From Haliotis rufescens (taxonomy: Eukaryota): 64,000 nt of DNA. How positions within the stretch are numbered: the first letter of the stretch is position 1; each line of letters opens with the position of its first letter. The DNA is taken from positions 42,346,001-42,410,000 of the forward strand of contig NW_025963890.1 of NCBI RefSeq assembly GCF_023055435.1. Direction: 5' to 3'. The notes below the pieces were generated by a model. That model was not told the origin of the DNA. It was given only the letters and a program-made list of their open reading frames with translations, and did no database searches. Of the stretch, positions 13,370-50,034 are shown in pieces. The translations under genes and the position numbers were made by a program.

Positions 13370-16300
13370 CATGAATCAATTAAGTGTATTGACAATGTTA
13401 ACATCTCATAGGTATACAATATTAAATTGGAGGAGTTTCCTCCCTTCCGTCCTTACACAGGCTGTGTGTTAAGATGGGTCCTTGTCTTTTCACAACTGTC
13501 AACGGGTACAAATTTACATTGTAAACTGTGAATGAATCACGGTAAAGTGTTTAGTTTTGTTAACATCCGGTATACAATATAAGATTGGAGGAGGTACCTT
13601 AGCTTGTGCAGTCAGGGGTTGAGCTTAAAGAGGCATGTCAATGTATAGGGCAAAACTGCTGAAATGACAATTTTTAGTCATAATAAAACTTAAATGTATC
13701 TTCACAGCATGTAGAATAAGTGCCTTTTCGCAGATTTTAGTTAAATATCTTAGAAGTTTGATAGATTAATGTCAGGTAGCTCTTTAGAATTACTATCATA
13801 CCCTAACTAAGACACTGTGAAATCTTATTATGCTCAATATAGGGGACTAATCACTGTAGACAAGTTGAACATATCAGAATATATCTGATGGGTATTTAAC
13901 CCTAACCCTACAAAGATGACTTTTAATACTTCTAACCAAGGGTTATGATTTTGTTTAAATTTCGAGACAGGGATAACGATCAGAGGTTATAACTATCTAT
14001 TAGTATGAAACTTCAGGAGAAATAGGGTACGAAAAGTAAAAAACATCAGTTTTATCAACATTAGTAGATGTGTTTTCCAGCAAATCAAATGTTAAAAGAT
14101 GGTTTAAGATATATTTCTCTCAGGAGTTTTGTGTGTAGAATCCTCACAGTTACAAAGAAAATTTGTAGCAATACCTTTTGGAAACGTTTTAGATATCTGG
14201 TCTGGTGTAGGAAACATAACACAGATCATATCCCCATCAGTGAGATGTATAACAGCCATGTTTCTGACCATCACTTTTCAAAGTTTCTATAAATAAAAGT
14301 GTTTTACAATGCAGACCAGTGTTTTAGGGATACATGAACACAAACTTCAAATGGTTGACATCCTTAAACCATTCTGACACATTGCCCGTACTGCAAAGCA
14401 TACAAATATATATCTCTATTACGATATACAATAATACACGTCTAACTAGTTGTAGTTACCATATCTCCTCATCGGTTCATCATAACATATTTCTGAAATG
14501 TTCATACCAATCTCTTCTTCATTCGCACCTCCACATACGTATACTTCTATTCGTAGAAAGTGAATTTTGAATCGGCATTCGAGATGTTTTGGAAAATCAA
14601 AATGGACACCGCCGGTTTTGTTTTTGGATTTGGAATCTTTTCAAAGTTCAAATCGACGATTGAACAAACACGTATTTGGAGGTAATTGTTTAAGGAAGAG
14701 ATTTCAAAAACATTTTGTAGACAATCGGAGATGTAGAAGTTTACTGTGTTTCCTGCAGCGCACATTAGCACACATATCTAATGGGAGTGTCCGTAGCCTT
14801 GAAATACAGAAACACTCATATTAATGGGTGAACAGATGATGAAATATAGTGATCACGGCTAATTGCTAACAGTGGATTGAGAGGACGTAAATTGAAAGGA
14901 ATATAAGTCAAACTCACCTTGGACTTCAGTCCCGTTTACGCAGCAGTCAACACTTGCCAGTTAAAATCAAATATATAGTCACAATTTCGTTTTCAACAAT
15001 GTTCGAACGAACATCAACTTTCATTGCCTCAAAATGACGGAAACGGAAGTCGCATCACGGAGCAAAATCTCCTCTGTTACAGGGTTCGTTGAAAAGGATA
15101 TATTGTTGTGACAGAAAAAATAACGTTGCATTAATGTCTGAAATACTAGTGACCTTTTCGATTTAAATTATAATCATCACGTTTTAGTAGAGTACATATA
15201 ACTTCTTGACTGCGGGCCTCGCGTTCTTTAGCTGATACTTCCGTGTACTGGAACATTCCATAGTTCGATATGTCTTGTTGATGTTGGGGGAATACGTTTG
15301 AAACAGGTTACATGTAGTAGAGCGTGACAACCTTACCTGCTTGTTACACCTGGTGTTTTATTATATGGGATGTGATGTCACGAACCGCCTTCTCTCATAC
15401 ACAGAGATAGGTGATGCATTAAAGACTCACCACATTAAATAAAACATACATATTTTACACACAAGAAGATAGCAAATTGTATGAGCCACCCGCTTAAATA
15501 ATTAAATGAATACATTATTATTATTAAAACATTGATAAAGAGAATGATACACCAAACGCATTAAAATACATCTATTTGACACGATACATTAGCCATTATC
15601 TAAAATACATTTTCAGGTTTTGGCACTGGAGAACAATATTTCTGGGCAGGACACAATAAAACACATTTTCTCCACATCATTAAAATATGTATTGCACCGT
15701 TACCTACATTTCTCTAATAGTCTAGGGGTATAACAAAACATGACAGTAATCTTTACAACTTAAACACTTCCATGAAGTGGATTTAGTGTATCCACGTACT
15801 TGAAAAATTACATTCAGTTGAGATGAATATATTGTCATCTATAAGCATATACATTTATACCGTCTTACTGCTGAAATGACAATCCTGAGTCACTAAAAAG
15901 TACAAATGTATCTTCACAGCATTCAGAAGAAGTTTACGGCAGATTTTTATTTTTATATCTTAGATATTCAGCTGTCTTTATACACATTTTAGAGTATGTT
16001 TAGACAAAGTGGAAACGGTTTAGATACCTTGGCTGTAAGAAACACAACACATACCATATCCCTATCGGCCTTACATAATATAACAGCAATGTTTCTGACC
16101 ATATAGAGATTTTTCTGAACAAAAGTTTCTATAAAAAAGTGTTTGACAAGAAAGTATTATATGTAAGGCATATATGAATACCAACAAAAAAACGTTTGAC
16201 TTCCTTAAACAATATCCACCACATTCATTGAGAACTATTCGTTTCAATTAGGATATATTTCAAAATTAACATTTAACAAGCTGCAGTTACAATACTCCCT

Positions 16301-18997
16301 CACCCCTTCATTGTAAAATATGTCTAAAATCTACATTCCAATACGTATACTTCTATTCGTAGAAATATGTCGTTATGTGTTGTTGTTGTTAGGGGATTAT
16401 GTTTAAAACAGGTCACAGATACTATGGCGTGACACGCTCAGCCGCTTCTCGCATACGATGCCTTTATCATGTGGCCTGTTATGTCACGGAACTCCTTCCC
16501 TCATACACATCCAGCTTTATCATATAATACATACATATTTTAGACATAAGAACATAACAAAATGTATAAGCGATACGTTTAGGGTTATGAGACACCATCT
16601 ATACAGTTAATAAATACGACATTATTATTAAAACATTCATAAATAGAATAATGCAGCCAAATTGGTGTTTTGGCAGTTAAGAACAAGATGTCTTGCCTGG
16701 AAAGGATAAAACACATATTCTCCCCATCATTAAGAAAATAGGGAAAACTATAGTCCCNNNNNNNNNNNNNNNNNNNNNNNNNNNNNNNNNNNNNNNNNNN
16801 NNNNNNNNNNNNNNNNNNNNNNNNNNNNNNNNNNNNNNNNNNNNNNNNNNNNNNNNNNNNNNNNNNNNNNNNNNNNNNNNNNNNNNNNNNNNNNNNNNNN
16901 NNNNNNNNNNNNNNNNNNNNNNCTTGGATTCCAGTTTCTCTTGTTAATAACAGGACACTTGTTTGTCCAAATTAAATAAAATGTGAGAGTCTATGTTGTG
17001 GTAAAACGGATAATTGTTTGTAACAACACTTTCCACTGACCAAGGGGATGGGCTCTATCCCGATCGTTGGGTATATGTTCTAAATCCAATAACATTGCAT
17101 AGCTCTGTTATGAACTGTGAGGTAGTCGGCAAGGTGCTCTGTCAGGTGTCTTTTAGACTAGGATTGTGGACTGTAATTGTCCACCACATCCATTCGAAAA
17201 TCCAAACCTTTAGATTTGGATACAATAACACACATTTTAATGTTGATACACCAGCAGTTAAGAGAGAGTCAAGCAGTAAATTCAAAGCACTGGTAAAATG
17301 TCATCAGCTAAAATACCAATAATAATGATTATCTACGTTAACAATCAAATCGTTGATAAACAGATTGAACAATAGGGGTGATAGGAGGCATCCTTGGCGT
17401 AATCAACACTTGAAACCAAACCATGAAGTTGAAGCATCATTAAACTATATCAGCTTTTGTAGCTAAAAATACTTTAATTAAATCCAACTTATGCACCAAG
17501 ATGAATGAAACTAACTATTCTAATGCACGTTTAAACTTACAACAGGTATAGCGAAGTAAAAAAATGCAACCAGTATTGACCAAAAAATCTTTTCGAGGGA
17601 ACATATTCAATGCATACTATAAATATTCTTGATGTCACGTTGTCTTACAGAAGAAAAAATCATTTGAAGTGAATAGGCATGACATACCATCCAGTTTAAA
17701 GATATATATTCAAACAAATTTCATTTCACAAATGAGAAGGATAAATGATATGCTTTGTTGGAAATACCCTCAAACATTTTCAGTGAATTATTCAAATGAA
17801 ACTCTAACCAGGCTGCAAGCGCCTAATGGGCACAGCAGGAATACATTACACTTAAGGTCACCGATACAGGAATAGAACTGTAGTTTGTAGATTATGTAGA
17901 CACAAGCATAGGTTTTACATGTAGGAATAATCACTGTCAATAGTTATAAATTATGTGGTACTGTGTCAAAATTCTTGGAATAACTATAGTTGAAGGCATC
18001 AACAAAATAGTAAAACGTGTGGTTCGTAATCACAGGGATATTGTCAATAACAACATGAATGAATTAAGTGTATTGATAATGTTAACATCTCACAGGTATA
18101 GAATATTAGGTTGGAGGAGTTGCCTCCCTTCCATTTGAACCTGTGGACATATGCTGGTTACCAGTGACTGTTCTGTCCCAACACAGGCTGTGTGTTACGA
18201 TGGGTGGTTGTCTTTTCGCAATTGTGAACGGGTACAAGTTTACATTGTAAATTGTGAATGAATCACGGTAAAGTGTTTAGTTTTGTTGACATCCGGTATA
18301 CAATATGGAGGAGGTACCTTAGCATGTGCAGTCAGGGGTTCAGGTATATATTATAATCTTAAAGAAGCATATCAATGTATATAGGGCAAAACTGCTGAAA
18401 TGACAATTTTGAGTCATAATAAAACGTATATGTATCTTCACAGCAGACTAAGAAGCTTACCACATATTTTAGTTAAATATCTTAGATATTTAACTTTGCC
18501 AAATGCATATGATACATTTTGATAACTTTTAATAATTCATTGCTGATGTAGATACACTTATTGTATGCAGTAAGATGTCGGGGCTAAACTGTAAATGTGA
18601 CGAAATTAAAGTTGGTTTGATAGATTAAGAAAACATAAGAAATGGCAGATATAATAAAGCCTTATTATTTGGTTTACAACGTAAGGTTATCAGTTAAACA
18701 ATTTACAATATGTATGCCAGAAGTTAAGAGAACAATAACACACACACACACATATACGCACACATACTCACGNNNNNNNNNNNNNNNNNNNNNNNNNNNN
18801 NNNNNNNNNNNNNNNNNNNNNNNNNNNNNNNNNNNNNNNNNNNNNNNNNNNNNNNNNNNNNNNNNNNNNNNNNNNNNNNNNNNNNNNNNNNNNNNNNNNN
18901 NNNNNNNNNNNNNNNNNNNNNNNNNNNNNNNNNNNNGAAAATAACGTTCCAAAACTGGACGTGTAGAAGCGTCTCGGAAAACAGACGCTTGTAGCAG

Positions 18998-19121
18998 TGA
19001 GTGAGTGAGTGAGTAATGTTTTACGCTACTTTTAGCAATATTCCAGCAAAATCACGGCGGGGGACACCCGAAATGGGCTTCACACATTGTGCCCATGTGA
19101 GGAATCGAACCCGGGTCTTCT
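18998..19121 (-). mobile_element. SINE family 1, truncated
   Basis: Reverse complement of the 3' part of 47929-48098 with (GTGA)n tail. Confidence 0.8.
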
Positions 19122-19702
19122 GGGCTAACGTACAACTGACTTGTATAAAAGGCAACGTGCATAATGCTATAATAATTGAGAAGTGTTGGCAAGTGTTTTG
19201 TGAGGATTAATCTGCTTCATGGTTTGATGTCAAGTGTGGATTACGCTAAGGATGCCTCCTGTCATACCTGTTATTCAATCTGTTCATCAATGATTTGGGC
19301 GTTAACAATGATAATCAATGTTTTAGTGTAGCTGATGCAATCATACTTTTAGCAGAAAATGCCCGTGATTTGACACTCTGAACTGCTGGTGTATCAACAA
19401 CTATTCGGAGGAAACACCGTCCTTTGTACAGAAGAGTTTGTGATGGCGAGCAAAACCAGAAGATGAATCTACGTATTGAACTTAGACGTAGTGTTCTGTT
19501 ATATCATTACCCAAAATGTAACAATAAATTGAACAAACCTTTTCTTCTCTTGCACAGGATTGGTGTATAATAGTCAGGACACTAATTTCTAGGGCATATA
19601 TAATATAATATCTGATTTACACGCACCGTTTACACATGTGTGCAATTGTTTGTTGTTTAACTCCGCACTCAGCAATAGTCTAGCCATTTGACAGTAGTCT
19701 GT

Positions 19703-19979
19703 AGTGAGTGAGTTGGGTTTCACGCCGCTTTTAACAGTATTCCAGTTATAGCACGGCGTGTCAGCATTATGTGGGAGGAAAGCCCGAAGTGATGCAGGAC
19801 TCAGACGTTTACTACTTCGGTGAAACCGACGAGCACGGGTATGGTGCTAACAAACCTAGAAACATAATCGGGGCGAACCGGGATTCGAACCCACAATCAT
19901 AAGTTCCTGGCGTGCCCAAGGGACGCAACTCTGCACAGCGGATCGCGGCGCCTTAAACGACTGTGCCACCCGTGCCCCC
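19703..19979 (-). mobile_element. SINE family 2
   Basis: Full length: head GGGGGCACGGGTGGC.CAGTCG, B box GGTTCGAATCC, (CTCA)n tail. Confidence 0.9.
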
Positions 19980-21052
19980 TAACGTCAGTCTGTAAATAAT
20001 CGAGTATGAATCAGACAATTTAGTGATTGACATCATGAGCATCAAGCAACGTAAATCGGATACGACATGCATCAACCAATCCCAGGGGTGGGTGGTATAT
20101 CTACAAATTTGATCATATGCATATGTTTGTAAACATTTAACATGAATGAACTTGGTACAATTGCGACATTTACATCAAGTCTAGATGTATTTTGCTATAA
20201 TAATTGAGAAGTGTTGGCAAGTGTTGTGTGAGGATTGATCTGCTTCATGTTTTGATGTCGAGTGTGGATTACGCCAAGGATGCCTCCTGTCATACCTGTC
20301 ATTCAATCTGCTCATCAATGATTGCTGAGGTTCATTTTGACAATTTTGTAAATACACAAAGAATGATTTCCACCTTCTCCGATAGGCGCGAGACACAAGG
20401 TACATGTATCCTCACTACATGTGTTCGTTACAATGCATGGCAAGGAAGAGGGAAGGTGAAACCTGTTCAGCAGAACACAATGCGGTCACTTCCGTGTCAA
20501 ACGTACTTTAGTTTCCCACATTTGCTGCTACACATTGGTAAGTCACATGTGCTTTGTATGGAGCCCGTCAGAGTCATACTCGGGTAGAAGAGGTAGAACA
20601 AGAACCGACAAATGAGCATCGAGTGATTTCCCGGGTTTTATTCAGTTTTACAATCGATTTTGTATGTGTTTGTGACTGATGGCACCAGTATGGCAGGGTA
20701 CGTAACTTTTTCGCCTGGTATCATCACTATTTATGATATGATTTAGTCGGAAAGGACTCTGTTTTGGCAGATGTTTCTTTTGATAATGAAAGGGTTTTGT
20801 CGCTTATACTTAAAGTATGATCTGGCTGAGTTTATGTCTGTGTGCTATATTACTGATGGTGGGGTTATGCAAAGTTCACTCTCTCACTCACTTCAGTAGC
20901 AATATTTTGATACAAAATGCAAATATTATCGTAGTATTGAATACTTCCTGAGATTTCTAATTTTAATTTCTTATTCTTTAATTCTGTTTATGTGTTCGTA
21001 AAAGTGCCATATGCACACAACTTTGTTTCATATATTATGATAACATCAAACT

Positions 21053-21334
21053 AGTGAGTGAGTGAGTTGGGTTTAACGCCGCTTTTAACATCATTCCAGT
21101 TATATCACGGCGTGTCAGCTTAATGTGGAAGGAAAGCCTGAAGTGATGCAGGTCTCAGACGTTTACCACTTCGGTGAAACCCACGAGCACGGGTATGGTG
21201 CTGACAAACCTAGAAACATAATCAGGGCGAACCAGGATTCGAACCCACAATCATAGGTTTCTGGCGTGTCCAGGGGACGCAACTCTGCACAGCGAATCGC
21301 GGCGCCTTAGACGACTGGGCCACCCGTGCCCCCC
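21053..21334 (-). mobile_element. SINE family 2
   Basis: Full-length copy; counterpart in the duplication at 53946-54225. Confidence 0.9.
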
Positions 21335-21549
21335 TAACATCAAAATAGGACTATACAATACCTAAAATCGCTTTAATGTAAATTGATACACAGTCGAAGT
21401 ACATGTGGATCATGTACGGTCCTCTTCCTATTTGTATTAAGTGAATAGAGATTTGTATCAAACCATCATGGTTAGCGAGGGAATTGGTAGTATTTCAGTT
21501 TTATCACATCGCGTCAGCTTGATCAAGGTCTTAGTCTATAACTGCTGAG

Positions 21550-21821
21550 GACCCGTGAAGATCCGGGGTAGAATAGGTCTTCAGCAACCCATGCTTGCCG
21601 TAAAAGGCGACTATGCTTGTCGTAAAGGGCGACTAACGGGATCGGGTGGTCAGGCTCGCTGACTTGGTTGATGCATGTCATCGATCCCAATTGGGTGGAT
21701 CGATGCTCATGACATCAATCACTGGATTGTCTGGTCCAGACTCGATTATTTACAGACCGCCGTCATATAGCTGGAATATTGCTGAGTGCGGCGTAAAACA
21801 ACCAACCAATCAACCAACCAA
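21550..21821 (+). mobile_element. Short retroposon family 3 (no tRNA head seen), (CAAC)n tail
   Basis: 14-bp TSD CTATAACTGCTGAG at 21536 and 21822; copies at 54443-54687, about 63445-63630 and about 1910-2105. Confidence 0.88.
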
Positions 21822-22199
21822 CTATAACTGCTGAGTAGCAGCATCGCACACATATTTCAGCATCATTGTCCCTTGCAGTTTCTGTGTACGCTGTCAAAGT
21901 TGTCATAGTCATTTCATTACTAGAAAGTAACACAAAGTGTTTGATCGAAGAGTGTGTGATATTTTACTGCTCAAATATATTCATGAATATCATTTGTTAG
22001 ATATAAGGAAAAATAACTCAAAAGTTATAATTGAAATTATCTCAACTCAGATAAGTCCTTATAGATCGCTACTTACAATTGCCACAGACTTTTAATCATC
22101 ATTATGGCGTAAAACTAAATAGAGCGACAAAATTATTTCCATTATTATATGGAATCTCTGCTAAAACAGTCTGTTGTATGACTTTGACTATAGCATGTG

Positions 22200-22600
22200 T
22201 ATATGAATCACTATCAACCTGTAATGATACCAGGTATCTGTGAAATGGTAAAAACCGGTGGAACCCATCACAAACACATGCAAAGGCAAGTCAATTGATC
22301 ACCTAAACAAACACAAGAACATATGGCATAAGTCGACATAGAGAATTGCATCTCACATAAATTTGGTCAATGATGCGTCAAATTTGGAAATGTCCTCCAC
22401 ATTTTGAAGTTTTACGGCCACCTCAAATGTTGTAACCTTGATCAAACAACTTCTGAGCAAGAGTCGTATGACACGCTTTGAAATCTTGGTAGAAAGAGCT
22501 TGCTCGATTGTATCTCAAAAGTTGTGAAATGTAAACACCACAGGCTGTTTGTATTCGGAATCGTACATTCTATTGGATATGGAAAGGGTTTTGTTGCTTT
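22200..22600 (-). mobile_element. Penelope-like RT C-terminal relic (duplicate about 55075-55480)
   Basis: Reads AYGVYISQLLRYNRASSFYQDFKACHTTLAQKLFDQGY; similar to 44780-45200. Confidence 0.7.
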
Positions 22601-23005
22601 AATCTTTATGATTACGAAGAGGAAACTGTCGCTTTCATTCATAATTTTAGATTCGTCCGAATCCTGTATGCGAAAGAAGATCATGAAACAATGTGTGATG
22701 TGACAGTTTTCATGACAAGGACATAATTTGGTTACAAAGACAGTATTTTCCACAACATGTACAACTTCCGTGTTTGTTTACGATACATCAAGACAATAGG
22801 AACCTTTCTCTAATCGACTCCAGTTCGCAATATTGTAAGATTGTCGGGTAATCTCTTGTAGATTATGACCAGTTTCCTGTAGCAAAAGATGCATGTGTTC
22901 ATATTATTGGCACATCTTGATTATTTGCCAGTATCATCATTGACGAAGTGGTACGCTGACTTTATCGTTCTACAATCACAAGCCACCTCAAGTATGTTGA
23001 CACAT

Positions 23006-26000
23006 TTTGATCATCTATTGCCTGCCTTGGGGTAAACATTGACTGAACAAAGCAGTAGTGTTTGATCATCTATTGCCTGCCTTGCGGTAAACATTGATTT
23101 AACAAAGCAGTAGGTGTTTGAGCATCTGTTGCCTGCCTTGCGGTAAACATTGACTGAACAAGGCAGTAGTGTTTGATCATCTATTGCCTGCCTTGCGGTA
23201 AACATTGACTGAACAAAGCAGGAGTGTTTGATCATCTATTGCCTGTCTTGCGGTAAACATTGACTGAACAAGGCAGTAGTGTTTGATCATCTATTGCCTG
23301 CCTTGGGGTAAACATTGATTGAACAAAGCAGTAGTGTTTGATCATCTATTGCCTGCCTTGCGGTAAACATTGACTCAACAAAGCAGTAGTGTTTGATCAT
23401 CTGTGGCCTGCCTTGCGGTAAACATTGAACAAAGCAGTAGTGTTTGATCATCTATTGCCTGCCTTGCGGTAAACATTGACTGAACAAAGCAGTAGTGTTT
23501 GATCATCTATTGCCTGCCTTGCGGTAAACATTGATTTAACAAAGCAGTAGTGTTTCGATCATCTATTGCCTGCCTAGGGGTAAACATTGAACAAAGCAGT
23601 AGTGTTTGGTCATCTATTGCCTGCCTTGCAGTAAACATTGACTGAACAAAGCAGTAGTGTTTGATCATCTATTGCCTGCCTTGCGGTAAACATTGATTTA
23701 ACAAAGCAGTAGTGTTTGAGCATCTGTTGCCTGCCTTGCGGTAAACATTGACTGAACAAGGCAGTAGTGTTTGATCATCTATTGCCTGCCTTGCGGTAAA
23801 CATTGACTGAACAAAGCAGTAGTGTTTGATCATCTATTGCCTGTCTTGCGGTAAACATTGACTGAACAAGGCAGTAGTGTTTGATCATCTATTGCCTGCC
23901 TTGGGGTAAACATTGACTGAACAAGGCAGTAGTGTTTGATCATCTATTGCCTGCCTTGGGGTAAACATTGACTGAACAAAGCAGTAGTGTTTGGTCATCT
24001 ATTGCCTGCCTAGCGGTAAACATTGACTGAACAAAGCAGGAGTGTTTGATCATCTATTGCCTGTCTTGCGGTAAACATTGACTGAACAAGGCAGTAGTGT
24101 TTGATCATCTATTGCCTGCCTTGGGGTAAACATTGATTGAACAAAGCAGTAGTGTTTGATCATCTATTGCCTGCCTTGCGGTAAACATTGACTCAACAAA
24201 GCAGTAGTGTTTGATCATCTGTGGCCTGCCTTGCGGTAAACATTGAACAAAGCAGTAGTGTTTGATCATCTATTGCCTGCCTTGCGGTAAACATTGATTT
24301 AACAAAGCAGTAGTGTTTCGATCATCTATTTCCTGCCTAGGGGTAAACATTGAACAAAGCAGTAGTGTTTGGTCATCTATTGCCTGCCTTGCAGTAAACA
24401 TTGACTGAACAAAGCAGTAGTGTTTGATCATCTATTGCCTGCCTTGCGGTAAACATTGATTTAACAAAGCAGTAGTGTTTGAGCATCTGTTGCCTGCCTT
24501 GCGGTAAACATTGACTGAACAAGGCAGTAGTGTTTGATCATCTATTGCCTGCCTTGCGGTAAACATTGACTGAACAAAGCAGTAGTGTTTGATCATCTAT
24601 TGCCTGTCTTGCGGTAAACATTGACTGAACAAGGCAGTAGTGTTTGATCATCTATTGCCTGCCTTGGGGTAAACATTGACTGAACAAGGCAGTAGTGTTT
24701 GATCATCTATTGCCTGCCTTGGGGTAAACATTGACTGAACAAAGCAGTAGTGTTTGGTCATCTATTGCCTGCCTAGCGGTAAACATTGAACAAAGCAGTA
24801 GTGTTTGATCATCTATTGCCTGCCTTGGGGTAAACATTGAACAAAGCAGTAGTGTTTGATCATCTATTGCCTGCCTAGGGGTAAACATTGACTGAACAAG
24901 GCAGTAGTGTTTGATCATCTATTGCCTGCCTTGGGGTAAACATTGAACAAAGCAGTAGTGTTTGATCATCTATTGCCTGCCTTGCGGTAAACATTGACTG
25001 AACAAAGCAGTAGTGTTTGGTCATCTATTGCCTGCCTTGGGGTAAACATTGACTGAACAAAGCAGTAGTGTTTGATCATCTATTGCCTGCCTAGGGGTAA
25101 ACATTGACCGAATAAGGCAGTAGTGTTTCGATCATCTATTGCCTGCCTAGGGGTAAACATTGAACAAAGCAGTAGTGTTTGGTCATCTATTGCCTGCCTT
25201 GCAGTAAACATTGACTGAACAAAGCAGTAGTGTTTGGTCATCTATTGCCTGCCTTGGGGTAAACATTGACTGAACAAAGCAGTAGTGTTTGATCATCTAT
25301 TGCCTGCCTTGGGGTAAACATTGACTGAACAAGGCAGTAGTGTTTGATCATCTATTGCCTGCCTTGCGGTAAACATTGACTGAACAAAGCAGTAGTGTTT
25401 GATCATCTATTGCCTGCCTTGCGGTAAACATTGATTGAGCAAGGCAGTATTGTTTGATCATCTATTGCCTGCCTTGTGGTTAACATTGACTGAACAAGGC
25501 AGTAGTGTTTGATCATCTATTGCCTGCCTTGCGGTAAACATTGATTGAGCAAAGCAGTAGTGCTTGGTCATCTATTGCCTGCCTTGCGGTAAACATTGAC
25601 TGAACAAAGCAGTAGTGTTTGATCATCTATTGCCTGCCTTGGGATAAACATTGACTGAACAAGGCAGTAGTGTTTGGTCATCTATTGCCTGCCTTTGGGT
25701 AAACATTGACTGAACAAGGCAGTAGTGTTTGATCATCTATTGCCTGCCTTGGGGTAAACATTGACTGAACAAAGCAGTAGTGTTTGATCATCTATTGCCT
25801 GCCTTGCGGTAAACATTGATTGAGCAAGGCAGTATTGTTTGATCATCTATTGCCTGCCTTGTGGTTAACATTGACTGAACAAGGCAGTAGTGTTTGATCA
25901 TCTATTGCCTGCCTTGCGGTAAACATTGATTGAGCAAAGCAGTAGTGCTTGGTCATCTATTGCCTGCCTTGCGGTAAACATTGACTGAACAAAGCAGTAG

Positions 26001-26442
26001 TGTTTGATCATCTATTGCCTGCCTTGGGATAAACATTGACTGAACAAGGCAGTAGTGTTTGGTCATCTATTGCCTGCCTTTGGGTAAACATTGACTGAAC
26101 AAGGCAGTAGTGTTTGATCATCTATTGCCTGCCTTGGGGTAAACATTGACTGAACAAAGCAGTAGTGTTTGATCATCTATTGCCTGCCTTGGGGTAAACA
26201 TTGACTGAACAAAGCAGTAGTGTTTGATCATCTATTGCCTGCCTTGCGGTAAACATTGACTGAACAAAGCAGTAGTGTTTGATCATCTATTGCCTGCCTT
26301 GCGGTAAACATTGACTGAACAAGGCAGTATTGTTTGATCATCTATTGCCTGCCTTGTGGTTAACATTGACTGAACAAAGCAGTAGTGCTTGATCATCTAT
26401 TGCCTGCCTTGCGGTAAATATTGACTAAACAAGGCAGTAGTG
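23006..26442 (+). repeat. 55-bp satellite, about 63 units, with higher-order blocks
   Basis: Unit TTTGATCATCTATTGCCTGCCTTGCGGTAAACATTGACTGAACAAAGCAGTAGTG; some 51-bp variants. Confidence 0.98.
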
Positions 26443-26940
26443 TACACGTTACTGGGGATGGCTGCAGCTTACATTCTGTGTAACTCACAGTCACTTGTTG
26501 ATTGTGTGAAACAAAATTTATACTTCTCATTTCTGATTTAACTTGTAATTGAAAAATTGCTATGAACCATACCCAGTGTTTTATCTGGATGTGTCCGTGA
26601 CGTCCTCTGTAAGAAGCTGTATGCCAAGATGGATGGTTTCGATTTTCAGCTGTGAATTAACCCTTCATTTCCAGCAATATGTCATCAGCTCCAGTGTATT
26701 TATTCTACATTTGTCAGTTGCTAAGGTACTTACTTAAGAGCATATATACTTTATTCAAATTTCATGGAAAGACACATGATGCTTACAACAGAGCTTTTCA
26801 TTCAAGTACCTGGTTAAGTAATTCGAGATTCTGACAAATATGACAGTTGACGATGCCATATCATGCTATTTGACCTTTTATGAGGAACTTTCACAGTTCT
26901 CACATACTGAACATTTTGTGAGTTGCGGGTACTACCAGTA

Positions 26941-27102
26941 GTGAAGTGAGTGAGTATTGTTTTACGCCGCTTTATGCAATATTCCAGCAATATCACGGCT
27001 GGGGACACCAGAAATGGGCTTCACACGTTGTACCAATGAATCGAACCCGGGTCTTCGGTTCGACGAGCGAACACTATAACCACTAGGCTACCCCGACGCC
27101 CC
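26941..27102 (-). mobile_element. SINE family 1
   Basis: Reverse complement of family 1; counterpart at 57004-57168. Confidence 0.85.
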
Positions 27103-27358
27103 ACCAGCTGTGATGACCATGCTTGGATGTATACCCATTTCGTGAACAACTTGTGTGTTTACTGATTTTCAGTGTTCTATTCACATAATTTTCATCACTA
27201 AATTGCATTTTACTTCATATGGCATCTGTTATTCTATGGCGTTTACGTTTTAAATTAATTCACTTCCCGTGGGATTTCACATGACAATCGTATTATACAT
27301 TATCGAAGTGTCTAACGTAGTGTATAATATTTCACAGGTATAGTTTGCTGATACAACA

Positions 27359-30300
27359 ATGGCCACACCATCTGCAGTCATTGCTGTCGCCGCTCACATC
27401 ATCGTACTTACCCATGGTAGGTATCACTCTTCCGTTCACAATTTTACTTACTTTGAACGCAGCAATAATATAGTTTCAAATTGTTTGATGCCCTTATGTC
27501 TGACTATATAGAGATTATTTGCCGAGTGTGCCGGACATTAGGCATATATATATTAGGGATAAACATTGTCTTATAAATGCGATCCTTTTATTTCTAATAT
27601 ATGATTATTACGACGACGTTACGGAAACACAAGAATATAATTTCAAATTGTGTCATTCTTGAAGTAATTTCACCTCAAGGAGTAACTAAAGAAACTGCAT
27701 CAATAAAGAATGCGAACCGCCCCATTAATGATAAAGTGCAGATAGTTTGCCTGCAAACAAAACCCACACACATTGGGAACCCACGAGCACGGGTATGGTG
27801 CTGACAAACCTAGAAACATAATCGTGGCGAACCAGGATTCGAACCCACAATCATAGCTTTCATAGCATTGATGTGTGGAGATTAAGAGTAGTTCTTGGTG
27901 GCTTCATTTGCATATTTATCGGCCCGTGATCAAGTATATGTCACTAAGAGACAGGTCACTACTTTAAACACTTTCCATTCTGTCATAATTTCTATTTACA
28001 AGTATATTTCATATTATGCTAAGTAGAGGAAAATGGCAAAACTTAGAATTGGTAAGGAATAGAGGGATCTTGGTACCATAACTGAGCATGAACTAAATCT
28101 TATAAAGACGGGGCGGTCGGGTAGCCTAGTGGTTAAAGCGTTCGCTTGTCACGCCAAAGACCCGGGTTCGAATCCAGACATGGGTACAATGTGTGAAGCC
28201 CATTTCTGGTGTCCCCCGCCGTGATATTGCTGGAATATTGCTAAAAGCGGCGTAAAACCATACTCACTCACTCACTCTTATAAAGATGACATTTACCATA
28301 AATGGGCCATAAAGATTGCATGTATCGCGTCGTTTAAGTCTTTTTGATGTCGATACAACTATTTTCTTCCTGTTTTCCTGTTTTTTACACAGAACATCAT
28401 AACTTTCAAATTCCTCTTTTGGAATAGAAACCTGCCAAAAATAGAAAAATAACATTAAAATTACCGGCAACTATTACGAAGAATATATTATTGATAAAGA
28501 TGGACACGTATGTGTCGAAAACAAAACAGTTCCGCAAGATACCAGTTCGAATCAGCGTTTTCAGATAACTTAGCTTGCTACGATATTTGTTTTACAATAT
28601 GTATATTTCAGCCCTCGTATTTGTTTTCGCTGCTGGGAATGTTATGCTGGAATACCCTTTTAAGTTTCTATATTTTGATATTAAAGCTGTAGATGGATTG
28701 TAAGTGCTATTTGGTTGAAGTGTTTGAAGATTACATAAAGAAATAGATTTATATCCTGTGTATTCAGTGTTTCTGTTCCCACTTCCAGCCTGTAGGGATC
28801 CCACAAATTGTATCAAGTTAAATCATGTTGATACAACCGGCAAACCTACGTGTGAGCTCGGGTGTATTGATGGATGGTCCGGCGACTGCTGTCGGCAGCA
28901 CTGTCTCGACAGGTGCATGGCTTGTTCCTCCAGAAATAAACGTGAATGTACAAAGTGTGAATCTGGTCGTTATGGAATCAGATGTGAGGATCTCTGTGGA
29001 CAGTGTCATAAGGGCAACTGTTCCATCAATGGGACATGTCATGATGGGTGTAAGCCTGGCTTCTGGGGAACACGCTGCAGCAATCCGTGTTCTCAACACT
29101 GCAAGGATGAAGAAATGGACAGTCCCTGTGAACACCATACAGGACATTGCATCTATGGTTGTAAGGGCGGATACTTTGGGGAATCATGTGACGCCATGTG
29201 TCCAGATGACTGTGAGGGGTGTAACAGTACACACAGAGATTGTCAAGTATGTCGGGGTGGCCGATGCTCCACACAGTGTAATGACGGGTTCTATGGTATT
29301 GAATGTAATCAGTCTTGTCTACAGAACTGTAAGCAGTGTCTTAATTCAAACACAACATGCAAGACTTGCTCAGATAAGGATGGGATGTGTTCTATAGGTT
29401 GTATTCATGGTTTCTATGGCCCGACGTGCAATCAAACATGTCCACAGAATTGCAAAGACTGTAACGAATCAGATGTAGGTTGCCTAAAATGTGGAAGAGA
29501 GGATGGAGAATGCTCTCAAGGATGCAGGGAAGGGTATTATGGACGCCACTGTCAAATCACGTGCCCTGAGAACTGTCTTCAGTGTAACACGACCAGGGAC
29601 TGTGACGACTGTATGGTGTCTCATCGTGGTAGCAACTGCACCCTGTTATGTCACACGTGTCCGTCCGTACGTCAGTATATAAACTGTACAGTGAAGTGTA
29701 AGGACGGTATTGATGGAGAAATGAATGACATTACAACTCACAAGGCCAGTTCTAAGGACAACGAGGATTTCTTCGGTACCATCTCAGACCTGATAAACGA
29801 AAAAGGTATACCTTGTGTTAGTATGCTTGTAATGTGTTTTGGCATCGATGGTGTAGTCACTGAAATTAATGTTTTTTATGTCATTTACATGTGGAGGTAA
29901 TAATCAACATTTATTAAATTTAAGACTTATACTACTCAAAATAAGTTTCACACCCGATTCTTATATATTACTACTGCTATTTTTCATGGCATGACATGGG
30001 TGTTCTTTGTCTTCTTTTGAGTAGTATACAACGACACAACACACTAATAAACATCATCGTCGCACATGAAAGGACAGATGTATAAAACACATATTACGTT
30101 TCACCTAACTAATACAAGTAAAATACATTCGCACAAACTCCATGGAGGTATGTGTATAACTACACACATTACACAATTAACACAAAAACGCCTAAAAACT
30201 GTATTATGTCTCTTTCCAAACGTAAACAATATCTATCATCATTTTGTTTTTCAGAGTATCTTCTTCCATTTTTGGCCAGTGCTCTTGTGTTGTGCATAGG

Positions 30301-31406
30301 TCTCTCTGCCTTCATCTTGTGGAGATGCAAGTAGGTTAAACTAAGTATGGTTATGTGAGCCAATGTAAAGAGTGAGTGAGTCAGTTGGGTTTAACACCGC
30401 TTTTAACAGTATTCCAGTTATATCACAGCGTGTCAGCTTAATGCGGGAGGAAAGCCCGAAGTGATGCAGGTCTCAGACGTTAACCACTTCGGTGAAACCC
30501 ACGAGCACGGGTATGGTGCTGGCAAACCTAGAAACATAATCGGAGCGAACCGGGATTCGAACCCACAAACAGGTTTCTGGCGTGCCCAAGGGACGCAACC
30601 CTGCACAGCGAATTGCGGAGCCTTAGACGACTGGGCCACCCGTCTCACCATTGGGTACGTATACAATAGCAATCCGCCAAGTCACAGACAATTACCGCAA
30701 TTAAGTGTATAAAATTAATAATAGAAGCATGGAGTCTGGTGTGATGAATATCTAATACATCCTTGTTTTATTTAGGAAGACCCGCAGGGAAAGACTTTCA
30801 GCGATGGACAATGGTTGTTTGGAAGTAAAGACGTCAGAGGAAGAAGTGTTCCAGAAATGTGGAGACATTTACCACGAAATACACGATGAAGATCTGGACA
30901 CGAACATGTCTCTCATACCAGCAGGACAGAGACCTCTACCCGACAGGCCCAGATTACCCATTCCCCTTGAAGCAGTAACCAGTGCCGTAGACCATGCCTG
31001 TTCCTTACCAGAGACCGGTGCGAGTGGACACTCGTCTGTCGGGTATCTGACGCCTCAACAAACGCAAGACGTAGAACAGCCAAGATACACGTCCTCTAGG
31101 ACTGATGATGGTGTATACCTTGACGTTCGGCAGAGTCATAAGCCGGAACTGGTAGGTGAAACCTCGTTTACTGTCCCAACTGGAGAAGTTGGTAGGAGGC
31201 ACCTGGCACAAAGACATTCAAGGAGAGATATCAGGACTAGAAAATGTGGAACAAAGCAACTCTCTTTGGATTCTGGCACTTGTTTTGTAACGAATGAGGA
31301 TCCTGAAACTACAAAGAAGGATAAAGCTGGTAACAGACTGTTCAAAGTACGTGCTCCAGTGTGTAAGAGAACAATGCTAAACCCACGTGGGTCGTGTGAA
31401 TTTTAA
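27359..31406 (+). CDS. Receptor B: multiple EGF-like-domain type I membrane protein, about 593 aa; join(27359..27416,28789..29805,30255..30330,30776..31406)
   Basis: GT-AG introns, same phases as A, 1782 nt in frame. Signal exon MATPSAVIAVAAHIIVLTH, EGF exon (ORF 28758..29900), TM exon YLLPFLASALVLCIGLSAFILW, cytoplasmic exon (ORF 30804..31406). Confidence 0.88.
27776..27858 (-). mobile_element. SINE family 2 fragment in intron 1 of receptor B (longer at 57842-57998 in C)
   Basis: AACCCACGAGCACGGGTATGGTGCTGACAAACC...GGATTCGAACCCAC. Confidence 0.8.
28110..28275 (+). mobile_element. SINE family 1 (tRNA-Asp-like head) in intron 1 of receptor B
   Basis: A box TAGCCTAGTGG, B box GGTTCGAATCC, (CTCA)n tail, 11-bp TSD TCTTATAAAGA; shared with C at 58250-58415. 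Confidence 0.92.
30370..30643 (-). mobile_element. SINE family 2 in intron 3 of receptor B
   Basis: Near full-length family 2 copy. Confidence 0.88.
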
Positions 31407-39300: not shown

Positions 39301-39369
39301 ACATTCGTGATTTTGACACTTTCAAGGAAGGTCGATTAATCTCTCTGGCTCATTATTTCTGTCAATCAA

Positions 39370-45530: not shown

Positions 45531-47928
45531 CACCAAAATAATATACATGATATAACATGTGGTTCACAGACACAAGGATATTGTAAATAATTGTATGAAC
45601 CAATTAAGTGTATTGATAATGCTAACATCCCACAGGCGGTATACAAAATTAGTTTGGAGGAGTCGCATCCCTTCCGCTGGAATCATTGAAAATTCGCTTT
45701 TTAACTGTCGCTGTTGTGTAACTGCAACTGTGTGTTAACCTGGGTGGCTGTCTTTTCGCAACTGTCAGCGGTAACCCGTTTACATTGTAAATTATGAATG
45801 AGTTAAAGTAAAGTGTATTGTTATGTTAATGTCGCGGTATACAATATACAACAGGAGACGTTTCCTCCCTTCCTTTAACTTGCAATGCTGCACTTGATTC
45901 AAGTTGATACACATTCAAGAATCTTACTTTATCTTGTGGATACAAAATACATCCACTTGAGACTGGAGTTCAAGTATATATTGAAATATTAGGCAGATGA
46001 CTTTATACGGCCTTACTGTTGAAATAATAATTTTTAGTCATCATAAAACTTTAAAATATCTTCACATCTTAGATATTTAACTATGCAAAATGCATATGAT
46101 TGAATATGTTTTGTTAAAGTGAAATTTCAATTACTTTTTATAATTCATTTATTATTTGCTATTAGTTTTGGGATATAAACTGTAAATTGGATAGAAGTTT
46201 GATAGATTAATGTCTGGTAGCGGTGTAGAATTACTTTCATAACTTAACTAAGACACTGTGAAATCTTATTATACTCAATATTTGGGACTAAAGACGAGTT
46301 GAACATATCAGAATATATCTAATGGAAAGCAACTGCTGCTTAGCTTCAATTGCTTTCCTGGGTACCTATTATCCTAACCCTACAAAAATGACTTTTAATA
46401 CTTCTAGCCAAGGGTTATGATTTTTCTTTAATTTCGAGACAGGGATTACGGGCAGATGTTTTAACTATCTATTAATATCAAATTGGAGGAGACATAACAT
46501 AATAGGGTACGAAAAGTAAAAACATCAGTTTTATCAACATCAGTATATGTGTTAAATGTTAATGTTAAAATCAAATGTTAAAAGATGGTTTAAGATATAT
46601 TTCTCTCAGGATTTTTGTGTGTAGAATCCTCACAGTTACAAAAAAAATCTGTAGGAATTATTGGTTTATTCAAGAATGAAGACAATACCATTTGGAAACT
46701 TTTTAGATATCTGGTCTGGTGTAGGACACATAACACAGATCATATCCCCATCAGTGAGATGTATAACAGCCATGTTTCTGACCATCACTTTTCAAAACAA
46801 AAGTTTCTATAAATAAAAGTGTTTTACAACGCAGACCAGTGTTTTAGGGATACATGAATACAAACTTCAAATGGTTGACATCCTTAAACCATTCTGACAC
46901 ATTGCCCGTACTGCAAAGCATACAAATATTTATCTCTATTACGATATACAATGATACACGTCTAACTAGTTGTAGTTACCATATCTCCTCATCGATTCAT
47001 CATAACATTTTTCTAAAATCTTCATACCAATCTCTTCTTCATTCGCACCTCCAAATACGTATACTTCTATTCGTAGAAAGTGAATTTTGAAGTGGCATTC
47101 GAGATGTTTTGGAAAATCAAAATTGACACCGCCGGTTTTGTTTTTGGATTTAGAATCTTTTCAAAGTTCAAATCGACGATTGAACAAACACGTATTTGGA
47201 GGTAATTGTTTAAGGAAGAGATTTCAAAAACATTTTGTGGACAATCGGAGATGTAGAAGTTTGCTGTGTTTCCTGCAGCGCACATTAGCACACATATCTA
47301 ATGGGAGTGTCCGTAGCCTTGAAATACAGAAACACTCATATTAATGGGTGAACGGATGATGAAATATAGTGATCACGGCTAACTGCTAACAGTGGATTGA
47401 GAGGACGTAACTTGAAAGGAATATAAGTCAAACTCACCTTGGACTTCAGTCCCGTTTACGCAGCAGTCAACACTTGCCAGTTAAAATCAAATATATAGTC
47501 ACAATTTCGTTTTCAACAATGTTCGAACGAACATCAACTTTCATTGCCTCAAAATGACGGAAACGGAAGTCGCATCACGGAGCAAAATCTCCTCTGTTAC
47601 AGGGTTCGTGGAAAAGGATATATTGTTGTGACAGAAAAAATAACGTTGCATTAATGTCTGAAATACTAGTGACCTTTTCGATTTGAATTATAATCATCAC
47701 GTTTTAGTAGAGTACATATAACTTCTTGACTGCGGGCCTCGCGTTCTTTAGCTGATACTTCCGTGTACTGGAACATTCCATAGTTCGATATGTCTTGTTG
47801 ATGTTGGAGGAATACGTTTGAAACAGGTTACATGTAGTAGAGCGTGACAACCATACCTGCTTGTTACACCTGGTGTTTTATTATATGGGATGTGATGTCA
47901 CGAACCGCCTTCTCTCATACACAGAGAA

Positions 47929-48098
47929 GGGGCGGTCGGGTAGCCCAGTGGTTAAAGCGTTCGCTCGTCACGCCGAAGACCCGGGTTCGATTCCCGACAT
48001 GGGTACAATGTGTGAAGCCCATTTCTGGTGTCCCCCGCCGTGATATTGCTGGAATATTGCTAAAAGCGGCGTAAAACCATACTCAGTCAGTCAGTCAG
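47929..48098 (+). mobile_element. SINE family 1, young insertion
   Basis: TSD TCATACACAGAGA at 47915 and 48099; empty site at about 15395-15410. Confidence 0.93.
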
Positions 48099-49959
48099 TC
48101 ATACACAGAGAGATAGGTGATGCATTAAAGACTCACCACATTAAATAAAACATACATATTTTACACACAAGAAGATAGCAAATTGTATGAGCCACCCGCT
48201 TAAATAATTAAATGAATACATTATTATTATTAAAACATTGATAAAGAGAATGATACACCAAACGCATTAAAATACATCTATTTGACACGATACATTAGCC
48301 ATTATCTAAAATACATTTTCAGTTTTTGGCAATGGAGAACAATATTTCTTGGCAGGAAACAATAAAACACATTTTCTCCACATCATTAAAATAAGTATTG
48401 CACCGTTCCCTACATTTCTCTAATAGTCTAGGGGTATAACAAAACATGACACTCATCTTCAACAGCATCTTTACAACTTAAACACTTCCATGAAGTGGAT
48501 TTAGTATATCCACGTACAAATTACATTCAGTTGAGATGGAATATATTGTCATCTATAAGCATTTACATTTATACCGTCTTACTGCTGAAATGACAATCCT
48601 GAGTCACTAAAAAGTACAAATTTATCTTCACAGCATTCAGAAGAAGTTTACGGCAGATTTTTATTTTTATATCTTAGATATTCAGCTGTCTTTATACACA
48701 TTTTAGAGTATGTTTAGACAAAGTGACATTTTAATAGCATGTAGTCAATCATTTCTGATGTCGTTACACTTTTGTTTGGTATCAGATGTCCTGGCGAAAC
48801 TATAAATTTAACAAAATAAAAGCTATCTTGGTAGATTAATGCCTGGTAGCTGTGTAGAAATAATTATACCTTGGATCAGACATTGTGAAATCTTTGAGGT
48901 CCATATCCTGAAGCTTCATACAAAGCTAAACAACCTTTGGGAGATAAACACCATAAAACGTTGCACATATTAGAATATATCAAAACAACATAAACATAAG
49001 TTTTATCAACAGTTGTCTATGTGTTTTCTAGCAAATACAAATGTTGAAAAGGGGTTTAATAAATATATTTCAAATAGTGACGAACTCATATTCAGGAGAC
49101 GTTTTTAATAGAATCACATACTATAGTCAAAGTTAGAATTTGGAAACGGTTTAGATACCTTGGCTGTAGGAAACACAACACATACCATATCCCTATCGGC
49201 CTTACATAATATAACAGCAATGTTTCTGACCATATAGAGATTTTTCTGAACAAAAATTTCTATAAAAAAGTGTTTGACAAGAAAGTATTATATGTAAGGC
49301 ATATATGAATACCAACAAAAAAACGTTTGACTTCCTTAAACAATATCAACCACATTCATTGAGAACTATTCGTTTCAATTAGGATATATTTCAAAATTAA
49401 CATTTAACTAGCTGCAGTTACAATACTCCCTCACCCCTTCATTGTAAAATATGTCTAAAATCTACATTCCAATACGTATACTTCTATTCGTAGAAATATG
49501 TCGTTATGTGTTGTTGTTGTTAGGGGATTATGTTTAAAACAGGTCACAGATACTATGGAGTGACACGCTCAGCCGCTTCTCGCATACGATGCCTTTATCA
49601 TGTGGCCTGTTATGTCACGGAACTCCTTCCGTCATACACATCCAGCTTTATCATATAATACATACATATTTTAGACATAAGAACATAACAAAATGTATAA
49701 GTGATACGTTTAGGGTTATGAGACACCATCTATACAGTAAATAAATACGACATTATTATTAAAACATTCATAAATAGAATAATGCAGCAAAAGCATTAAA
49801 ATACATGACATAAAACATACATAAAACATTTTCCATTATCTAAAATTCATTTGGTGTTTTGGCAGTTAAGAACAAGATGTCTTGCCTGGACAGGATAAAA
49901 CAGATATTCTCCACATCATTAAGAAAATAGGGAAAACTATAGTCCCTTTCTGTGCATTA

Positions 49960-49961
<2 letters not shown>

Positions 49962-50029
<68 letters not shown>
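49962..50029 (+). repeat. (GT)n microsatellite
   Basis: Direct reading; corresponds to the N gap 16758-16922 in duplication copy 1. Confidence 0.97.

Positions 50030-50034
<5 letters not shown>

What the first reader, a model, noticed from the sequence alone, without database searches (positions are those of the whole stretch)
27359..31406. Receptor B is a chimera: C-type upstream region and ectodomain on an A-type TM and signalling tail (paired-receptor arrangement)
Seen: B matches C through upstream DNA, signal exon, intron 1 and most of exon 2 (DPTNCIKLNHVDTTGKPTCELG... is identical). It switches at about CPSVR (about 29660-29672) to A-like sequence: YINCTV.CKDGIDG...KDNEDFFG, TM exon, KTRRERLSA tail and 3' flank. 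C continues differently (CLPDGNC..., KIHRDRAAS tail). Inference: unequal crossing-over inside the large EGF exon (anti-Lepore type) produced two receptors with nearly the same ligand-facing end but different cytoplasmic outputs (B vs C), and two with different tips but the same tail (A vs B). A/B introns look more diverged than the B/C block, so more than one event is likely.
Basis: partly seen in the sequence, partly recalled or inferred. Interest (0 to 1): 0.8.

Follow-up and report, generated by a model that had tools for sequence, protein, structure and literature searches.

The report
Chimeric EGF-repeat receptor gene in abalone
The middle of three neighbouring red-abalone receptor genes really is a hybrid, with the front of one neighbour type and the back of another, joined inside an exon by recombination between gene copies; this is a clean but ordinary case of how tandem gene families reshuffle.

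Summary
The window holds three intact, already annotated single-pass receptor genes with EGF-like repeats: A (2537-7010), B (27359-31406) and C (57425-62205).

- **Switch point:** B follows C, then follows A, switching in an 8-bp interval at 29655-29662, in the CPSVR codons. To the left, 98 informative sites are C-like and 12 A-like. To the right, 14 are C-like and 57 A-like (permutation p = 1e-4).
- **Size of the shared block:** the C-like part belongs to a roughly 16-kb duplicated block, 13751-29662 against 46192-59789, with mean substitution divergence 2.8%.
- **Which gene is the hybrid:** B. The H. asinina protein is C-type over its whole length and the H. cracherodii protein is A-type over its whole length.
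- **Assembly:** contigs from four independent studies cross the junction, so it is not a local misjoin.
- **Mechanism:** one A x C anti-Lepore crossover does not fit. The spacers that model predicts as duplicates are not homologous. B's tail branches outside the A/H. cracherodii pair. The block is more diverged at its edges (7-11%) than inside (0-4%), which suggests later homogenisation. A separate 265-bp C-to-A conversion tract also exists.
- **Paired-receptor idea:** not supported. Neither B nor C has a charged transmembrane residue, an ITIM or an ITAM. Both tails are long, homologous and share one tyrosine motif.

This is a new example of a known process, of modest interest.

The parts
27359..31406 (+). 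Gene B, the chimera. Exons 27359-27416, 28789-29805, 30255-30330 and 30776-31406; 593 aa. It equals the database protein P0001, 'scavenger receptor class F member 1-like', H. rufescens.
29655..29662 (+). Exchange interval inside exon 2, 8 bp wide, in the CPSVR codons. It lies between the last C-type informative site (29654) and the first A-type site (29663). It corresponds to A 4627-4634 and C 59782-59789.
13751..29662 (+). Duplicated block, copy 1: non-coding upstream DNA, a 55-bp satellite, and B's exon 1, intron 1 and most of exon 2.
46192..59789 (+). Duplicated block, copy 2: the same content in front of and inside gene C. Mean substitution divergence from copy 1 is 2.8%; the edges are at 7-11% and the interior at 0-4%.
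57425..62205 (+). Gene C, C-type throughout. Exons 57425-57482, 58943-59932, 60844-60919 and 61602-62205; 575 aa; equals P0002.
2537..7010 (+). Gene A, A-type throughout. Exons 2537-2591, 3494-4777, 5461-5536 and 6323-7010; 700 aa; equals P0013.
29663..31406 (+). A-type 3' part of B: the end of exon 2, the TM exon and the tail exon. Protein identity is 79% to A and 38% to C.
59311..59576 (+). Second exchange tract, C side. C and A are 98-100% identical here and share a 27-bp deletion relative to B 29250-29276. The A side is 3862-4127 and B's counterpart is 29157-29449.
3994..4496 (+). In-frame 123-bp tandem repeat in A's exon 2 (4.1 copies, 99% matches). It adds EGF-like modules that the H. 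cracherodii A-type protein lacks.
23006..26443 (+). 55-bp satellite inside block copy 1, 63 copies. The same satellite has 12 copies at 55884-56544 in copy 2.

Best explanation
B is a real hybrid gene in a tandem cluster of SCARF/MEGF-like receptors in red abalone. These receptors have a signal peptide, EGF-like repeats, one TM helix and a tail of about 200 aa.

Non-allelic homologous recombination put about 16 kb of C-type DNA in front of the 3' end of an older A-type paralogue. That DNA carries the promoter region, a satellite, exon 1, intron 1 and about 85% of exon 2. The paralogue contributed the end of exon 2, the TM exon and the tail. The right-hand exchange point is an 8-bp interval in a stretch of exon 2 conserved in all three genes. 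The left-hand end abuts low-copy repeats found only at this locus.

The two blocks were later partly homogenised. A further 265-bp tract moved between C and A, probably from C to A.

Shown here: the mosaic structure, the breakpoint, the polarity and the reality of the junction. Inferred: the exact mechanism (long-tract conversion or double crossover, as against unequal crossover followed by loss) and the timing.

The product is a receptor with a C-like ligand-facing part and an A-type intracellular tail. Whether the two tail types signal differently is unknown.
For: - **Breakpoint statistics:**
- **Extent and divergence of the duplicated block:**
- **Protein trees:** the 5' tree is ((A,Hcra),(Hasi,(B,C))) and the 3' tree is ((C,Hasi),(B,Z,(A,Hcra))), each main split with 100/100 support. 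The AU test rejects B+C in the 3' part (p = 3e-7) and B+A in the 5' part (p = 2e-47).
- **Polarity:** the H. asinina protein P0004 is C-type before and after the junction, and the H. cracherodii protein P0003 is A-type throughout.
- **Copy number:** genome-wide, only B and C carry this 5' block.
- **Junction in independent data:** contigs from public runs cross it. X1 covers 29576-30288 with 0 differences, X5 covers 29576-30276 with 0, X12 (another species label) covers 29599-939 with 1, and X15 (possibly RNA) covers 29565-29803. Six sites on the left tell B from C, and 25 to 58 sites on the right tell B from A or C.
- **Later homogenisation:** block edges are at 7-11% divergence and the interior at 0-4%; heterogeneity p = 1e-23.
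- **Fold:** the predicted ectodomain fold matches EGF-like repeats, with human SCARF1 among the best hits.
Against: - The timing, and whether the junction is recent or an old one later homogenised, therefore stay open.
- Synonymous divergence near the junction (B-C dS 0.20 on few sites) is close to the B-A tail dS of 0.14. The two halves may differ less in age than the non-coding identity suggests.
- The evidence comes from short-read contigs, not long reads. The tandem order of the two 16-kb blocks rests on the published HiFi assembly (PMC9709998).
- The AU test on the 5' protein alignment does not formally reject grouping B with the A-type proteins (A + Hcra) against C + Hasi (p = 0.085). 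The DNA evidence carries that point.
Confidence: 0.8

Rival explanations
1. A single anti-Lepore unequal crossover between present-day A and C produced B.
For: - The gene order A - B - C, with B carrying the 5' end of the downstream gene and the 3' end of the upstream type, is the anti-Lepore layout.
- The breakpoint lies in sequence shared by all three genes.
- B-A tail dS (0.14) is not far from B-C dS next to the junction (0.20).
- Intron 3 of A and of B both carry a SINE in the same order, at 88% identity.
Against: - The model predicts that 7011-13750 duplicates 31407-46191. Only scattered locus-specific repeat fragments match.
- B's tail branches outside A + H. cracherodii (95/97 support).
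- Introns 2 and 3 and the 3' flank of A and B align poorly or not at all, while the B/C block is 96-99% identical over kilobases.
Confidence: 0.12
2. Assembly artefact or structural polymorphism. B and C would be alternative haplotypes of one locus placed in tandem, so no single chromosome carries A, B and C.
For: - Mean block divergence (2.8%) is within a factor of two of the reported heterozygosity of 1.37% (PMC9709998).
- N runs lie inside the blocks.
Against: - The flanks of the two blocks differ on both sides. The right edge is a sharp intra-exon switch to a 3' half that is 38% identical in protein, not an allele-like difference.
- The assembly was built from HiFi reads with a mean length of 15 kb.
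- B-specific contigs occur in all 14 DNA runs listed, from five studies. In run X5, contigs with C states lie alongside B-specific ones at similar depth.
Confidence: 0.06
3. B and C form a functional paired-receptor system. They would have the same ligand-binding face and opposite or distinct signalling, maintained by selection as in KIR, Ly49 or SIRP pairs.
For: - The ectodomains are 90% identical up to the junction, while the tails are 38% identical.
- C's tail has extra tyrosine motifs (YSDV, YPEV, YLNL) that B lacks.
- Both genes are intact, and dN/dS is below 1 (0.27-0.35 for B-C exon 2).
Against: - There is no charged TM residue, no ITIM or ITSM, no ITAM and no short-tailed partner.
- Both tails share the membrane-proximal GDIY[HD]EI and PxxP motifs.
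- No expression or ligand data exist.
- C has lost a conserved cysteine and 9 residues that B retains.
Confidence: 0.1

Closest known systems
Hybrid genes from non-allelic homologous recombination in tandem families: haemoglobin Lepore and anti-Lepore, GYPA/GYPB hybrids, red/green opsin hybrids; 'chimeric duplicates' as reviewed in PMC3449122
   Same: There is a sharp intragenic breakpoint in shared sequence, the two halves give different phylogenies, and the hybrid sits between the two parental types in a tandem array.
   Different: Here the two halves differ in apparent age, and the reciprocal duplicated spacer expected from a single crossover is missing. The copied piece carries about 13.6 kb of upstream DNA and shows later homogenisation.
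Gene-conversion mosaics in vertebrate paired immune receptors, for example KIR2DS4 formed by conversion with KIR3DL2 (PMC2768862)
   Same: A tandem receptor family recombines ligand-binding and signalling parts by interlocus exchange.
   Different: There is no activating/inhibitory dichotomy here: no ITIM, no charged TM residue and no short tail. The fold is EGF-like, not Ig-like, and no ligand is known.
Class F scavenger receptors (SCARF1/SREC) and MEGF10/Draper/CED-1-type EGF-repeat receptors
   Same: The architecture is the same: signal peptide, tandem cysteine-rich EGF-like modules, one TM helix and a long tail. The predicted fold matches the human SCARF1 N-terminal fragment 8hna (probability 1.00, 30% identity over 168 columns). 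RefSeq names these genes this way.
   Different: No Pfam model hits even at E = 10, and there is no sequence match to any PDB chain. The tails have no NPxY or ITAM. Close relatives were found only in Haliotis; bivalve proteins are 30-35% identical or less.

Membership tests
Anti-Lepore-type hybrid gene (single unequal crossover) | The 5' and 3' parts have different nearest relatives, with one sharp breakpoint in homologous sequence. | tested here: met
   The break lies between 29654 and 29663 (98/12 against 14/57 informative sites, p = 1e-4). The AU tests reject the alternative groupings.
Anti-Lepore-type hybrid gene (single unequal crossover) | The hybrid lies between the parents and carries the 5' end of the downstream parent and the 3' end of the upstream parent. 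| tested here: met
   The order is A (2537) - B (27359) - C (57425), all on the + strand. B has C's 5' end and an A-type 3' end.
Anti-Lepore-type hybrid gene (single unequal crossover) | The whole interval from one parental breakpoint to the other is duplicated, and both halves of the hybrid are the same age. | tested here: not met
   7011-13750 against 31407-46191 shows no collinear homology beyond local repeat fragments. B/C non-coding divergence is 0-4%, whereas the A/B introns are mostly unalignable. B's tail lies outside A + Hcra.
Paired activating/inhibitory receptors | The ectodomains are nearly identical. | tested here: inconclusive
   Amino-acid identity up to the junction is 89.8%. 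There is a 9-residue indel, and C has a Cys-to-Tyr change at 59110-59112.
Paired activating/inhibitory receptors | One member has an ITIM or ITSM in a long tail. | tested here: not met
   Neither B's nor C's tail matches [ILVS]xYxx[ILV] or TxYxx[IV].
Paired activating/inhibitory receptors | The other member has a short tail and a charged TM residue for an ITAM adaptor. | tested here: not met
   Both TM segments are uncharged, and the tails are 212 and 203 aa long.
SCARF/MEGF-like EGF-repeat receptors | The ectodomain is made of tandem EGF-like modules. | tested here: met
   The cysteine pattern is conserved in 21 aligned proteins. The AlphaFold model (pLDDT 69) matches SCARF1, DLL1, Tie2 and laminin LE modules.
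SCARF/MEGF-like EGF-repeat receptors | The protein is recognised by curated EGF, EMI or laminin-EGF profiles. | tested here: not met
   There were no Pfam families for the exon pieces at E <= 0.1, and none for the ectodomain exons of A and B or for the full H. asinina protein at E <= 10.
SCARF/MEGF-like EGF-repeat receptors | The tail carries an NPxY and/or ITAM engulfment-signalling motif, as in Draper, MEGF10 and CED-1. | tested here: not met
   None was found in A, B, C or the H. cracherodii and H. asinina proteins.

The most novel reading that the evidence does not exclude
B and C could be a mollusc version of a paired receptor: one recognition surface wired to two different tails (A-type and C-type). 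The arrangement would be created by recombination and then kept similar in the ligand-binding part by continuing gene conversion. That would be an innate-immune diversification strategy convergent with vertebrate KIR or SIRP pairs.
Probability: 0.1. Interest if true: 0.6.

Novelty: new member of a known kind. Interest (0 to 1): 0.3.

Why it matters
This is a well-resolved natural example of exon-level domain swapping in an expanded mollusc receptor family. The breakpoint is narrowed to 8 bp, the polarity comes from two outgroup species, and there are signs of ongoing concerted evolution.

It shows how abalone can recombine recognition and signalling modules, and it offers a natural 'tail-swap' pair (B against C) for testing what the two tail types do.

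It does not reveal a new mechanism or a new kind of gene. All three genes are already annotated.

Tried and rejected
- **Pfam** on the exon translations of A, B and C and on the H. asinina protein gave no family, even at E = 10.
- **Sequence search against PDB chains** with the ectodomain exon and the tail exon gave nothing.
- **The look-up of encoding contigs** for the H. cracherodii and H. asinina loci was closed, so I made no synteny comparison and could not date the events against speciation.
- **Genes inside the duplicated upstream block:** no convincing ORF was found.
- **Repeat at the block's left edge:** I first took it for a genome-wide transposon. The genome search shows it is a low-copy repeat confined to this locus.
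- **Haplotig duplication** was considered and judged unlikely, because the flanks differ and the junction occurs in many runs.
- **Convergent evolution** as a cause of B/C similarity is excluded by the near-identity of 13 kb of non-coding DNA.
- **Literature searches** found no paper on this cluster, on MEGF/SREC chimeras in molluscs, or on invertebrate paired receptors of this type.
- **Limits kept:** Searches were made exon by exon, and the full-length proteins used in alignments are database entries returned by those searches. The N runs were left untouched.
Full report
**What is in the window**

The window is G000:C112:42346001-42410000 of a 1.33-Gb, 615-contig genome. The protein searches bear this out: the proteins encoded here are catalogued as Haliotis rufescens.

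Three genes lie on the + strand, each with four exons, canonical splice sites and open frames:

| Gene | Span | Exons | Length | Database protein |
|---|---|---|---|---|
| A | 2537-7010 | 2537-2591, 3494-4777, 5461-5536, 6323-7010 | 700 aa | P0013 |
| B | 27359-31406 | 27359-27416, 28789-29805, 30255-30330, 30776-31406 | 593 aa | P0001 |
| C | 57425-62205 | 57425-57482, 58943-59932, 60844-60919, 61602-62205 | 575 aa | P0002 |

The conceptual proteins are identical to these database entries. The genes are therefore already annotated, under automatic names such as 'scavenger receptor class F member 1-like' and 'MEGF10'. Each protein has a signal peptide, a large exon of cysteine-rich repeats, a one-exon TM helix and a one-exon tail of about 200 aa.

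**Checking the observation**

Self-BLAST shows that B aligns with C from far upstream into exon 2, and with A only in parts of exon 2, the TM exon and the tail exon.

In a three-way alignment:
- B-C identity is 97-100% from 28600 to about 28940, where A cannot be aligned.
- B-C identity is 92-98% on to about 29650, apart from one tract described below.
- After that, B-C drops to 80%, then 58%, then random, while B-A is 85-93%.

Informative sites give a maximum chi-square break between 29654 and 29663. The counts are 98 C-like and 12 A-like on the left, and 14 C-like and 57 A-like on the right (Fisher p = 8e-22; permutation p = 1e-4). The exchange interval is the 8 bp at 29655-29662, within the conserved CPSVR codons.

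Downstream:

| Part | Differs from A | Differs from C |
|---|---|---|
| TM exon | 7.9% | 26% |
| Tail exon | 10% | 50% |

The 3' flank of B does not align with A's.

**The chimera is part of a larger duplication**

The C-like part of B is the right end of a duplicated block, 13751-29662 against 46192-59789. The block holds no convincing gene other than the receptor's 5' part. It includes a 55-bp satellite with 63 copies before B and 12 before C.

Substitution divergence averages 2.8% but is very uneven (heterogeneity p = 1e-23):
- 10.7% in the first 400 bp.
- 0-2% over 14959-18772.
- About 4% over 18937-22923.
- 1-2% through the promoter and intron 1.
- 6-7% in the last 600 bp before the junction.

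Edges more diverged than the interior are what repeated homogenisation of an older duplication would leave. Genome-wide, only these two copies of the block exist. Only A, B and C are close in the ectodomain; the next hits are 44% identical or less.

**Polarity**

Exon-wise protein searches returned two informative outgroups:
- H. asinina P0004 has the B/C-type N-terminus and also the C-type sequence after CPSVR, the C-type TM and the C-type tail.
- H. cracherodii P0003 is A-type from signal peptide to tail.

The C-type and A-type whole genes are therefore old combinations, and B's combination is the derived one.

The trees agree:
- The 5' tree is ((A,Hcra),(Hasi,(B,C))).
- The 3' tree is ((C,Hasi),(B,Z,(A,Hcra))).
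- The main splits have 100/100 support.
- The AU test rejects B+C in the 3' part (p = 3e-7) and B+A in the 5' part (p = 2e-47).

Z is a fourth A-type tail exon, found 36 kb upstream of the window.

**Is the junction real?**

Logan contigs from public runs cross the junction:

| Run | Study | Span | Differences |
|---|---|---|---|
| X1 | P1 | 29576-30288 | 0 |
| X5 | P2 | 29576-30276 | 0 |
| X12 | P5, a different species label | 29599-29939 | 1 |
| X15 | P6, possibly RNA | 29565-29803 | 6 |

- The left part of these contigs contains 6 sites that tell B from C and 16 that tell B from A.
- The right part of exon 2 contains 58 sites that tell B from C and 25 that tell B from A.
- All 31-mers across the junction are unique in the window.
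- The X15 contig stops within 2 nt of the exon 2 donor site. It carries 25 further letters that do not lie on the intron. This fits splicing but does not prove it.

The junction is thus a real DNA molecule in several animals.

The tandem order of the two 16-kb blocks rests on the HiFi assembly (mean read length 15 kb, heterozygosity 1.37%).

**Mechanism**

A single A x C anti-Lepore crossover would duplicate everything from A's breakpoint to C's breakpoint. It fails on three counts:
- The predicted duplicate spacers, 7011-13750 and 31407-46191, share only fragments of low-copy repeats confined to this locus.
- B's tail branches outside the A + H. cracherodii pair (95/97 support).
- Intron 2 of A and B is largely unalignable and intron 3 is 29% diverged, whereas the B/C block is near-identical.

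The better reading is that an older A-type paralogue stood at B's position. Its front was replaced by the C-type block, either by long-tract interlocus conversion or double crossover, or by unequal crossover followed by loss. The event was anchored on the right in exon 2 and on the left beside U-derived local repeats at 11844-13754 and 45500-46066.

Timing remains uncertain. B-C dS is 0.08-0.20 in exon 2, against 0.14 for B-A and 0.21 for B-Z in the tail. With homogenisation evident, the junction may be older than the 97-99% identity suggests.

**A second exchange**

Over B 29157-29449, A and C are 98-100% identical (dS 0.026). They share a 27-bp deletion that B, H. cracherodii and H. asinina all lack. 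Within the tract A has B/C-type residues where its H. cracherodii orthologue differs, so the transfer probably went from C to A.

A then amplified the adjoining 123-bp unit to 4.1 copies.

**What kind of receptor, and is it a 'paired receptor'?**

- Pfam finds nothing, and there is no PDB sequence match.
- The cysteine pattern is conserved across 21 mollusc proteins.
- An AlphaFold model (pLDDT 69) matches EGF-like repeats. Human SCARF1 is among the best hits.

The defining features of paired receptors are absent:
- Both TM helices are uncharged.
- Both tails are long, at 212 and 203 aa.
- Neither tail has an ITIM, ITSM, ITAM or NPxY.

The B and C tails are divergent homologues that keep the same GDIY[HD]EI and proline-rich motifs. 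C has extra YxxV/L motifs, so different outputs are possible but not shown.

The B and C ectodomains are 90% identical, with dN/dS 0.27-0.35. That indicates purifying selection, not diversifying selection.

**Limits**

- The N runs were not touched.

**Verdict**

The event history is more layered than one anti-Lepore crossover, and the paired-receptor analogy is unsupported. This is a new, well-documented member of a known kind of event in already annotated genes.

Noticed in passing
G000:C112:42305900-42310392 (36-40 kb upstream of the window; loci L040, L002): There is a fourth A-type relic, 'Z'. It has an A-like promoter and signal exon and an intact 227-codon A-type tail exon (dN/dS 0.5-0.7 against A and B). 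No EGF exon or TM exon lies between them; a tandem-repeat array of about 1 kb sits there instead. Exon phases 1 and 2 would not join in frame, so it is probably a pseudogene or a remnant of another rearrangement.
   Followed up: partly
window 59110-59112: Gene C has TAT (Tyr) where B, A, H. cracherodii and H. asinina have a conserved cysteine (CTKC/CSKC motif). This leaves an odd number of cysteines in that module.
   Followed up: no
window 3994-4496: A's exon 2 has a 123-bp in-frame tandem repeat (4.1 copies, 99% matches). It adds three EGF-like modules that the H. cracherodii orthologue lacks, so it is a recent intragenic expansion.
   Followed up: partly
window 23006-26443 and 55884-56544: The same 55-bp satellite lies about 0.9 kb upstream of both B and C. 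It has 63 copies before B and 12 before C, which accounts for most of the length difference between the two blocks.
   Followed up: partly
window 18773-18936 and 51891-52037; also 16758-16922: Two N runs sit at homologous positions in the two duplicated blocks, which suggests masking rather than assembly gaps. The third N run has readable sequence opposite it in the other copy. None was filled or looked up.
   Followed up: no
window 7785-8869, 11844-13754, 45500-46066, 48581-48839 and others: Fragments related to 16923-18772 recur many times within this locus but almost nowhere else in the genome. They look like low-copy local repeats left by older rounds of duplication, and they flank the young block.
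   Followed up: partly
window 29565-29803 (run X15, record 17): A possible RNA contig from another study carries the chimeric junction. It has C-gene states at 29606 and 29609 and four other differences. This is an allelic B variant whose mosaic differs slightly from the reference.
   Followed up: partly
window 1397-1930: A 72-bp tandem repeat (7.4 copies, 95% matches) lies about 600 bp upstream of gene A's first exon.
   Followed up: no
window 28106-28277, 26940-27102, 30367-30643 and many others: tRNA-derived, SINE-like elements are abundant genome-wide (thousands of candidates at 95-99% identity). Copies sit in intron 1 of B and C and in intron 3 of A and B.
   Followed up: no
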